Below are positions 28,556-29,240 of a stretch of 64,000 nt of DNA, in pieces. Positions within the stretch are counted from its first letter, which is position 1; each line of letters begins with the position of its first letter. Both the position numbers and the translations under genes were made by a program. The stretch covers positions 118,234,001-118,298,000 of the forward strand of contig NC_042998.1 in assembly GCF_006345805.1 (NCBI RefSeq), in the 5' to 3' direction. Origin of the DNA: Octopus sinensis. Lineage: Eukaryota. The notes beneath the pieces were generated by a model, which saw nothing but the letters and a program-made list of their open reading frames with translations, made no database searches and had not been told where the DNA came from.

Positions 28556-28673
28556 GCTTACGTCCATATCATTTTGAAAGCACCGGTTCTCGTCCGATCA
28601 CCGAAGTTACGCAACGTCGAGCCTAGTTAGTACTTAGATGGGTGACCGCTTGGGAAACCTAGGTGCTGTAAGC
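28556..28673 (+). rRNA. Full-length 5S rRNA-like sequence (variant, pseudogene or SINE head)
   Basis: 118 nt, GCTTACG...GCTGTAAGC with paired ends. Contains CCGGTTCTCGTCCGATCACCGAAGTT, GTTAGTACTT and GATGGGTGACCGC, as in invertebrate 5S. No T4 terminator immediately after. Confidence 0.93.
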
Positions 28674-29240
28674 GTCACATATTTATGTCCTGATGCAGTG
28701 CCAGGCAGTGGCTCTAATGGCTGCTGATCTTACCGATTGGAAGTGTTATCATGTACATTATTTTTGTCTTGGTATAAGAGATGGGCTACAGCAAATATTC
28801 TACTCAATACCACAGTTTTGCTTGTCAGTTGTTTGACCTTAAGCAGTTGAGCATGTTCCTTAGTGGCTGACAATATGGGCATCTCTGATCACGAGCAGAA
28901 GTAGTGAGGGACCTTCATAGCCGTGTGTTGAAAGGAATTATTAGTTGTTTGGATAATTCACCTTTGGAAACATGGGTGATTCGTTCAACATCCTTAAACA
29001 ATACTTATTCAGGGACCTTTTGAGCAGGATGGGCTACTGGACCAGAAGAAAATTCTGACTGGACCCCACCAGCAAGGTCATGCGCAGTTTATCTTGATAT
29101 GAGATCACCATGTCGCGCACATATGGTTGTGATGCATGAGCCTGGTGTACTCTTATCAGGTAGGTAGTCATGATGGGTATACTGGGCTTCGTATATTTTA
29201 TCCCAGTGTCACTTTGATAGCATGCACTGCTCTCTCACTC
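28556..29240 (+). mobile_element. Candidate 5S-derived SINE (5S head, ~550 bp body, (AAT)n tail)
   Basis: 5S nucleotide +1 directly follows (AAT)n and is joined through about 11 nt to a body found four times in the window. The tail is (AAT)n. Confidence 0.6.

What the first reader, a model, noticed from the sequence alone, without database searches (positions are those of the whole stretch)
28556..29240. Candidate 5S rRNA-headed SINE that inserts into (AAT)n microsatellites
Seen: a complete 5S sequence starts at its +1 base directly after (AAT)n, lacks a T4 terminator, and runs into a ~550 bp non-coding body ending in (AAT)n. The body occurs three more times without the head (28114, 56564 reverse, 57223), always beside AAT repeats, and one copy is clearly 5'-truncated. 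Known: 5S-derived SINEs exist in fish, amniotes and some insects, and Dong/R4 LINEs target TAA repeats. Inference: this is a Pol III SINE3 mobilised by the Dong elements in this window; I do not know of one described in cephalopods. Caveat: a T5 run at about 28760 could terminate Pol III early.
Basis: partly seen in the sequence, partly recalled or inferred. Interest (0 to 1): 0.8.

Follow-up and report, generated by a model that had tools for sequence, protein, structure and literature searches.

The report
5S rRNA copy fused to octopus retroposon
A complete 5S ribosomal RNA copy sits fused to the front of one copy of a common octopus "jumping" repeat. The repeat normally moves without that head, so this is more likely a copying accident by a reverse transcriptase than a new 5S-driven SINE family, though a small amplified subfamily cannot be excluded here.

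Summary
A full-length 5S rRNA sequence (28556-28674, Rfam 99 bits) starts at +1 right after (AAT)5. It has no T-run terminator. After a 10-nt linker it runs into a 556-bp non-coding unit (28685-29240) that ends in (AAT)42. Three more headless copies of that unit lie in the window.

The SINE3 interpretation is only partly supported. The unit is an independently mobile, (AAT)n-tailed, non-autonomous retroposon. It nests among Dong/R4-like LINEs and shows LINE-like 5' truncations. The two other full-length copies I could find are window 57223 and an Octopus bimaculoides locus. Both start at exactly ATGNCCTGATGCAG directly after AAT repeats, with no 5S. No second 5S-unit junction occurs in about 65 kb of distinct O. 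bimaculoides sequence plus an orthologous 29-kb O. sinensis locus. T4-T5 runs in the unit are as frequent as chance, so full-length Pol III transcription is unlikely.

[quoted passage not shown] This is documented in vivo for R2. An amplified 5S-headed subfamily remains possible (about 0.3). A genome-wide junction count, which I could not run, would decide.

The parts
28539..28555 (+). (AAT)5AA: the tail of the older copy A and the target into which the 5S-body unit inserted
   Evidence: Sequence read directly. The 5S +1 G follows immediately.
28556..28674 (+). Complete 5S rRNA sequence (head) with no downstream T-run terminator
   Evidence: Rfam RF00001, 99.2 bits, model positions 1-120/120. 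Aligned with seven bona fide 5S genes from metagenome loci that all carry T-runs after the 3' end. The window copy differs from them at otherwise invariant positions, including one change that creates a T4 run at nt 17-20.
28675..28684 (+). 10-nt linker TCACATATTT between the 5S 3' end and the body 5' end. It is absent from the other full-length copies.
   Evidence: Alignment A2.
28685..29240 (+). Body copy B: a full-length copy of a 556-nt non-coding, (AAT)n-tailed, non-autonomous retroposon
   Evidence: 93.4% identical to the four-copy consensus. Starts ATGTCCTGATGCAG and ends CTCTCTCACTC.
29245..29369 (+). (AAT)42 tail of copy B, itself the target of the next insertion (a truncated Dong copy)
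   Evidence: TRF; sequence.
24403..24431 (+). Copy A, left piece: starts at body position ~105 directly after (AAT)38 (24290-24402)
   Evidence: blastn bodyD 107-131 = 24402-26; sequence.
28114..28538 (+). Copy A, right piece. It continues the body to its 3' end. Copy A is split by the LINE at 24432-28113.
   Evidence: Putative TSD CAATAGCACATAATG (24417-24431) / CAATAAGCATATATG (28114-28128), read.
57223..57778 (+). Copy D: full-length and headless, directly after (AAT)49 (57077-57222) and followed by (AAT)24 (57779-57849)
   Evidence: 97% identical to the consensus.
56565..56987 (-). Copy C: 5'-truncated at about position 93 and lacking the last ~65 nt
29370..29993 (+). 5'-truncated 3' end of a Dong/R4-like LINE inserted in the tail of copy B, followed by its own (AAT)35
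   Evidence: 98% identical to 40631-40990 (repeat finder I1); sequences.
40481..44330 (-). Near-full-length Dong/R4-like LINE flanked by TAA repeats: the candidate class of autonomous partner
   Evidence: RVT_1 and zf-RVT domains with no APE domain. CCHC motif and RPD..D..E.K endonuclease motif downstream of the RT, in a shifted frame. TAA arrays at both ends.

Best explanation
The locus is a chimeric retrocopy: a cDNA of mature 5S rRNA joined to the 5' end of a full-length copy of an independently mobile, ~556-nt, (AAT)n-tailed non-autonomous retroposon of octopods.

Proposed mechanism:
1. A Dong/R4-type (R2-superfamily, TAA-repeat-specific) reverse transcriptase nicked the (AAT)n tail of the older copy A.
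2. It primed on the (UAA)n 3' end of the retroposon RNA and copied that RNA to its 5' end.
3. It added or copied about 10 extra nucleotides, then jumped end-to-end onto the 3' end of a 5S rRNA molecule and copied it to +1.
4. The cDNA was then joined to the upstream AAT repeat.

On this reading the 5S is a passenger, not the family's promoter. The family's RNA normally starts at ATGNCCTGATGCAG.

What is shown: the anatomy, the headless full-length copies with an identical 5' end, the 5' truncation series, the shared AAT tails, and the nesting with Dong copies.

What is inferred: the template jump, Dong as the enzyme source, and how the headless family is transcribed (unknown; no recognisable Pol III head).
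For: 1. The 5S is complete from +1 to its 3' end, in sense orientation. No AAT tail separates it from the body, and AAT repeats flank only the whole composite. That points to one insertion event.
2. Two other full-length copies, one in the window and one in O. bimaculoides (91% identical to the consensus), start at the same nucleotide directly after AAT repeats and lack a 5S. The body therefore has its own defined 5' end and moves without a head.
3. Other copies are 5'-truncated at positions ~93, ~105, 355, 410 and 519, and those retaining their 3' end carry the same 3' end plus (AAT)n. This is LINE-like target-primed reverse transcription.
4. No further 5S and no further junction appear in the rest of the window or in L001-L003.
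5. T>=4 runs in the body occur at chance frequency, 3 against 3.6 expected. Copy B has a T5 run at nt 206 and a T4 run inside the 5S. A ~690-nt Pol III transcript is unlikely.
6. About 7-8 changes at positions invariant in real 5S genes match the 6.6% divergence of body B from its consensus. This fits a canonical 5S captured when B inserted and decaying neutrally since.
7. Precedent: R2 reverse transcriptase jumps in vivo from the 5' end of its own RNA onto U12 snRNA and tRNAs, giving small-RNA-headed copies (PMC3414825). 5S/L1 and U6/L1 chimeras are known (bioRxiv 10.1101/2025.02.02.635956).
Against: - Only two unbiased full-length copies could be examined. A 5S-headed subfamily making up as much as half of full-length copies is not statistically excluded.
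- A one-off chimera is a rare object to meet in a single 64-kb window, whereas an amplified family would be met easily.
- An O. vulgaris annotation lists four 'SINE 5S' families totalling 9.8 Mb, which might include this composite.
- The 10-nt linker is longer than the few non-templated nucleotides usual at R2 jumps.
- The 5S lacks the terminal U residues of mature 5S.
- The G->A and C->T changes fall on two positions that pair in helix IV, which hints at structural constraint. I did not calculate how likely this is by chance.
Confidence: 0.5

Rival explanations
1. The composite is a member of an amplified 5S-headed subfamily. In variant (a) it is a true SINE3, whose 5S internal promoter drives Pol III transcription of head plus body, mobilised by Dong-type LINEs. 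In variant (b) a founder chimera was re-transcribed together with its head by read-through or Pol II and copied further, as suggested for the R2-U12 subfamily of Drosophila ambigua.
For: - Full-length 5S starting at +1 next to the target repeat.
- SINE3 families are thought to arise from exactly such fusions.
- Four 'SINE 5S' families covering 9.8 Mb are tabulated for O. vulgaris.
- A random 64-kb window is far more likely to hold a member of a family with thousands of copies than a unique chimera.
- The possibly compensatory A91/T105 pair in helix IV.
- R2-U12 precedent for variant (b).
Against: - Neither of the two other full-length copies has a head, and both begin at the body's own 5' end.
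- No other junction in about 65 kb of distinct O. bimaculoides sequence plus an orthologous 29-kb O. sinensis locus.
- Against variant (a): T-runs at chance frequency, with T5 at +206.
- In the same paper the 'recently active' 5S family averages 6 kb per insertion, which is not SINE-like, so that class may be something else.
- By my rough density estimate the body family is far more abundant (~1-3% of sampled sequence) than the whole '5S' class (0.35% of the genome).
Confidence: 0.3
2. Two separate events: a 5S rRNA retropseudogene was inserted later into the AAT repeat exactly at the 5' boundary of an already resident copy B.
For: AAT arrays in this window are repeatedly re-targeted: copy A, copy B, a Dong fragment, and copy D inside another repeat's internal AAT array. 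The linker could be filler DNA.
Against: - A separate insertion should leave AAT repeat on both sides of the 5S. There is none between the 5S and the body.
- 5S rRNA has no (UAA)n 3' end to anneal to a TAA-repeat target.
- It requires coincidence with the exact 5' end of copy B.
Confidence: 0.1
3. A dispersed functional or recently functional 5S rRNA gene, or an assembly artefact joining 5S rDNA to a repeat.
For: High Rfam score with an intact overall fold.
Against: - No terminator, whereas all seven compared real 5S genes have T-runs within ~10 nt of the 3' end.
- Single copy, not in an array.
- Substitutions at invariant positions, including GTTAAGC->GTTACGC, and an internal T4 run.
- It begins exactly at +1 after a microsatellite with no upstream gene flank.
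Confidence: 0.04

Closest known systems
SINE3 / 5S rRNA-derived SINEs (zebrafish SINE3, AmnSINE1, megabat MEG, lepidopteran HaSE3)
   Same: A 5S-derived 5' head followed by an unrelated body and a LINE-type tail. Short and non-coding.
   Different: The head-body junction is seen only once here. The body circulates on its own with a precise 5' end. The body is not depleted of Pol III terminators. The head is a complete, near-canonical 5S rather than a diverged promoter fragment. The tail is a TAA microsatellite, not a CR1/L2/RTE 3' end.
In vivo template-jump products of R2 (U12 snRNA-R2 in D. ambigua, tRNA-R2 in D. pseudoobscura and D. yakuba; PMC3414825)
   Same: A small stable RNA copied onto the exact 5' end of a full-length element mobilised by an R2-superfamily reverse transcriptase. 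A few extra nucleotides or short repeats sit at the junction. A new subfamily could be seeded this way.
   Different: Here the 3' partner is a non-autonomous element, the target is a TAA microsatellite rather than 28S rDNA, the small RNA is 5S, and the enzyme (Dong/R4-like) is inferred rather than shown.
U6/L1 and 5S/L1 chimeric retrocopies of mammals
   Same: A small RNA fused 5' to a retroelement 3' part in one insertion event. Each junction is unique.
   Different: In human 5S/L1 chimeras the 5S is usually truncated and antisense. Here it is complete and in sense orientation, as in U6/L1. The 3' part here is a full-length unit, not a randomly truncated LINE.
Dong / R4 clade LINEs and their non-autonomous dependants (the SIDE concept)
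   Same: Insertion into and termination in (TAA)n, with 5' truncation. The body behaves like a short non-autonomous, non-Pol III element that depends on such a LINE.
   Different: No sequence similarity between the body and either end of the Dong copies in this window. No HDV-like ribozyme was detected at its 5' end.

Membership tests
SINE3 (5S rRNA-derived SINE) | 5' head derived from 5S rRNA containing the internal control region (box A, IE, box C) | tested here: met
   Rfam 5S_rRNA, 99.2 bits, full length. The ICR region is present but carries changes at positions invariant in seven real 5S genes. Promoter activity is not testable here.
SINE3 (5S rRNA-derived SINE) | Head and body form one repeated unit: many dispersed copies share the same head-body junction | tested here: inconclusive
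   One junction only. Neither of the two other full-length body copies has a head. No junction hits in L001-L003. The sample is too small and no octopus genome could be searched by DNA.
SINE3 (5S rRNA-derived SINE) | The unit can be transcribed end to end by Pol III, with no T>=4 terminators in the sense strand | tested here: not met
   Composite B has T4 at nt 17, T5 at 206, and T4 at 261, 463 and 641. The consensus body has 3 runs against 3.6 expected from shuffles.
SINE3 (5S rRNA-derived SINE) | 3' end shared with or recognised by a partner LINE | tested here: inconclusive
   The (AAT)n tail is shared with the Dong-like LINEs of the window. There is no shared unique 3' sequence.
Template-jump chimeric retrocopy (R2-U12/tRNA, U6/L1 type) | Small RNA in sense orientation fused directly to the retroelement with no tail between, and one set of target hallmarks around the whole | tested here: met
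   Order is (AAT)5 | 5S 1-119 | 10 nt | body | (AAT)42. Flanking repeats preclude recognition of a TSD.
Template-jump chimeric retrocopy (R2-U12/tRNA, U6/L1 type) | The 3' partner exists independently, and the junction lies at (R2 type) or inside (L1 type) that partner | tested here: met
   Headless full-length copies D and L001 share the 5' end ATGNCCTGATGCAG. The junction in B is 10 nt upstream of that end.
Template-jump chimeric retrocopy (R2-U12/tRNA, U6/L1 type) | The junction is unique to the locus (or to its orthologues) | not testable with these tools
   Needs a DNA search of an octopus genome. Only about 65 kb of distinct O. bimaculoides sequence plus an orthologous 29-kb O. sinensis locus could be fetched.
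Dong/R4-clade LINE (for the element at 40481-44330) | RT followed by CCHC and a PD-(D/E)xK restriction-like endonuclease, no N-terminal APE, and insertion in (TAA)n | tested here: met
   RVT_1 and zf-RVT only. CRVC..H..C in the ORF. RPDIILKD..LIDMTVP..KDLEIEISK downstream. TAA arrays at both ends. No phylogenetic placement was done.

The most novel reading that the evidence does not exclude
The composite is a young, amplifying 5S-headed SINE of octopods. It would have been born by a template jump onto 5S rRNA and be mobilised by TAA-microsatellite-specific Dong/R4 LINEs. That would make it the first characterised 5S SINE in a mollusc and the first SINE partnered with an R2-superfamily, microsatellite-targeting LINE, caught close to its birth alongside its still-active headless parent family.
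Probability: 0.2. Interest if true: 0.55.

Novelty: new member of a known kind. Interest (0 to 1): 0.3.

Why it matters
If it is a one-off, it is a clean natural example that R2-superfamily (Dong/R4-type) reverse transcriptases make end-to-end template jumps onto abundant small RNAs in a mollusc germ line. That is the raw material from which 5S- and tRNA-headed SINEs are thought to arise. It also flags an abundant, uncharacterised, headless (AAT)n-tailed retroposon family in octopus genomes, where over a thousand 'unclassified SINE' families await description. If the junction proves to be multi-copy, it would extend 5S-derived SINEs to molluscs and to a new class of LINE partner.

Tried and rejected
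1. Exact look-up of ten window ORFs in the protein collection found none. The Dong RT has no relative above 60% identity, so the window's own genome could not be reached.
2. A six-frame pseudo-protein of the body consensus gave one hit, an O. bimaculoides gene model with a body-derived N-terminus. This opened the only route to octopus DNA, loci L001-L003.
3. A homologue search with that gene gave no further octopus handles. A representative search with the GC-rich LINE RT gave none either: its relatives are in shrimp, coral, turtle and oyster.
4. Scans of metagenome and viral contigs for a conserved body motif returned 0 hits.
5. A metagenome scan with a 5S motif returned nine loci of unknown eukaryotes. 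They were useful only as real-5S comparators.
6. I tested whether the body has a hidden Pol III head or ribozyme. There was no Rfam match even at E<=10 and no ARAGORN tRNA. There was no significant similarity to the neighbouring tRNA-like head or to 5S. Fold z-scores were unremarkable.
7. I tested whether the body is a deleted Dong or other LINE. There was no nucleotide or translated similarity.
8. I first thought CCTAG/CTAGG in the 5S was SINE-specific covariation. I rejected this because the same motif occurs in bona fide 5S gene arrays.
9. No paper found in the searches run here describes a cephalopod 5S SINE.

Full report
**Observation.** Rfam finds a single family match in the whole window. 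It is a complete 5S rRNA at 28556-28674 on the + strand (99.2 bits, E 1.9e-20, model positions 1-120 of 120). The sequence shows (AAT)5AA immediately upstream of the 5S +1 G. No T-run follows the 3' end, which reads ...GTAAGCG TCACATATTT ATGTCCTGATG. From 28685 a 556-nt non-coding unit, the 'body', runs to 29240 and is followed by (AAT)42.

blastn and MAFFT confirm three further copies without a 5S:
- Copy D at 57223-57778 is full length and 90% identical to B. It is preceded by a perfect (AAT)49 and followed by (AAT)24.
- Copy C on the minus strand (56987->56565) is 5'-truncated and lacks its last ~65 nt.
It actually begins at 24403, right after (AAT)38, at body position ~105. It is split by a 3.7-kb GC-rich APE+RT LINE (24432-28113, minus strand) bounded by a ~15-bp duplication.

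**Context.** The window is full of TAA-tailed retroelements.
- The element at 40481-44330 (minus strand) has an RT ORF with RVT_1 and zf-RVT domains and no APE domain. It has a CCHC motif and, in a shifted frame, an RPD...D...E.K endonuclease motif. TAA repeats lie at both ends. These are the hallmarks of the Dong/R4 group of the R2 superfamily, which is known to target TAA microsatellites (PMC3812793).
- A 98%-identical 5'-truncated copy of its 3' end sits directly in the tail of body copy B (29370-29993) and has its own (AAT)35.
- The AAT array therefore records serial insertions: copy A, then 5S+B into A's tail, then a Dong fragment into B's tail.
- This supports the inference that the body is mobilised by Dong-type machinery. 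However, the body shares only the microsatellite tail with the Dong copies here, and no unique sequence.

**Organism and outside copies.** The window's own genome could not be reached. A six-frame pseudo-protein of the body consensus hit one Octopus bimaculoides gene model whose N-terminus is body antisense. Through its cluster mates I fetched 33 kb and 48 kb of O. bimaculoides chromosome CM046623.1, which overlap by about 11 kb. I also fetched 29 kb of the orthologous O. sinensis contig.

These loci contain the following:
- one full-length body copy, 91% identical to the consensus;
- 5'-truncated copies starting at positions 355, 410 and 519, all ending ...CTCTCTCACTC(AAT)n;
- some internal fragments.

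They contain no 5S and nothing matching the junction.

The full-length O. bimaculoides copy starts ...gataataataa|ATGCCCTGATGCAG. Copy D starts (AAT)49|ATGGCCTGATGCAG. Copy B has the same start after 5S plus 10 nt (alignment A2).

**What the body is.**
- It is a discrete element with a fixed 5' terminus, a fixed 3' end and a TAA tail.
- It shows a LINE-like spectrum of 5' truncations.
- It has no coding capacity or similarity to the LINEs present.
- It has no detectable tRNA, 5S, 7SL or ribozyme module.
- Runs of four or more T are as frequent as expected by chance: 3 in the consensus against 3.6 in shuffles.

It therefore does not look like a Pol III transcript. How it is transcribed is unknown. 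Conceptually it resembles the non-Pol III 'SIDE' dependants of R2 and R1 (PMC3414825).

**What the 5S is.** I compared it with seven bona fide 5S genes recovered from metagenome contigs. These score 94-117 bits, lie with tRNA, U2 or U3 genes or in 5S arrays, and each is followed by T-runs.
- The window copy has the same architecture, with lineage-type covariation in helix I.
- It carries about 7-8 private changes at otherwise invariant positions. One creates a T4 run at nt 17-20, and one alters the conserved GTTAAGC.
- This amounts to roughly 6% divergence, matching the 6.6% divergence of body B from its consensus.
- That is what a canonical 5S captured at the time B inserted, and decaying neutrally since, would look like.
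- Two of the changes (G->A, C->T) fall on positions that pair in helix IV. I note this as unexplained.

**Mechanism.** The simplest account of (AAT)n | complete sense 5S | 10 nt | complete body | (AAT)n, with no tail between the parts, is a single target-primed reverse transcription event. In that event the enzyme reached the 5' end of the body RNA and jumped onto the 3' end of 5S rRNA.

Exactly this has been documented in vivo for R2. U12 snRNA and mature tRNAs are found copied onto the 5' end of full-length R2 elements, with short extra sequences at the junction. In one species the product has possibly propagated as a subfamily (PMC3414825). End-to-end jumping with non-templated addition is a biochemical property of R2-type reverse transcriptase (PMC8857657, listed; not read in detail). 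Mammalian U6/L1 and 5S/L1 chimeras are the L1 counterpart.

**Why the SINE3 reading is not adopted, and why it is not excluded.**

Against it:
- The headless copies start at the body's own 5' end.
- There is no second junction in the limited sample.
- Pol III terminators are not depleted, and a T5 run lies 206 nt from the 5S start.

For it:
- Only two unbiased full-length copies were available.
- A one-off chimera is an unlikely thing to meet in one random window.
- A 2026 O. vulgaris annotation tabulates four 'SINE 5S' families covering 9.8 Mb without describing them (PMC13282606). However, its 'recently active' 5S family averages 6 kb per insertion, which is not SINE-like.

My estimates are about 0.5 for a one-off chimera and 0.3 for an amplified 5S-headed subfamily, of which a genuinely Pol III-driven SINE3 is the smaller part. 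I give 0.1 to two independent adjacent insertions and a few percent to a gene or an artefact.

**Novelty.** Small-RNA/retroelement chimeras and 5S SINEs are both known kinds. [quoted passage not shown] This would be a new example in a mollusc, involving a Dong-type system. Interest is modest unless the junction proves to be multi-copy. The decisive test is a BLAST of 28640-28720 against octopod assemblies together with a census of body 5' ends. It could not be run with the collections available.

Noticed in passing
window 24432-28113 (minus strand): A GC-rich (52% against ~35% background) APE+RT LINE with frameshifted ORFs, nested in body copy A with a ~15-bp TSD. Its RT fragment is 81% identical at protein level to a Penaeus indicus protein, 70% to a cluster that includes a Porites lutea protein, and 66% to a Pelodiscus protein. 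No octopus relative is in the collection. It is a candidate horizontally spread LINE.
   Followed up: partly
window 56996-57076 (+); L002 12027->11952: A tRNA-derived SINE-type head (A box TGGTGTAGTGG, B box GAATTCGATTCC, 'GTGGTTAAGAGC' motif) followed directly by (AAT)n and then a unit 'X'. The same arrangement occurs in O. bimaculoides, flanked by a perfect 43-nt inverted repeat. ARAGORN and Rfam do not call it a tRNA. Body copy D inserted into its internal (AAT)n array.
   Followed up: partly
whole window compared with L001-L003: The very abundant octopus SINE (motifs TCGATTACATCGACCCCAGTGC and GCATTTCGCCCGGCGTGCTAACG) occurs 5-7 times per 29-48 kb in the O. bimaculoides and O. sinensis loci but not once in the 64-kb window. 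The window may come from a different octopod lineage or from a SINE-poor, gene-poor region.
   Followed up: no
window 29380-29590: The 5'-truncated Dong copy begins with an inverted duplication of its own sequence (29380-29480 is the reverse complement of about 29490-29590). This looks like a twin-priming or snap-back type 5' inversion.
   Followed up: no
window 40481-44330 (minus strand): The Dong/R4-like LINE is near full length, but its endonuclease motif (RPDIILKD...LIDMTVP...EIEISK) lies in a different frame from the RT ORF, which stops at 41013. So this copy is frameshifted, even though a 98%-identical fragment shows the family was recently active.
   Followed up: partly
L001 17344-17896; protein P0121: The antisense strand of a body copy supplies the first ~32 residues (MTTRLIRVHQAHASQPYVRDMVISYQDKQRMT) of an O. 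bimaculoides UniRef gene model. This is probably an annotation artefact or exonisation of the repeat.
   Followed up: no
L002 4960-5163: A body 3' fragment (positions 410-557 plus the AAT tail) directly abuts the 3' end of the abundant octopus SINE. The last ~150 nt of the body may serve as a tail module shared between families, or this may simply be a truncated insertion next to the SINE.
   Followed up: no
window 28646 and 28660 (5S positions 91 and 105 of alignment A3): Private G->A and C->T changes hit two positions that pair with each other in 5S helix IV, which keeps the pair intact. This is either coincidence or a hint of structural constraint on the head.
   Followed up: partly
window 18480-18753; 39958-40228; 52165-52893: A palindromic (AAT)n(ATT)n microsatellite; a near-perfect hairpin with 124-nt arms (99% complementary, 23-nt loop); and a Tc1/mariner-type DDE_3 transposase ORF remnant.
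   Followed up: no
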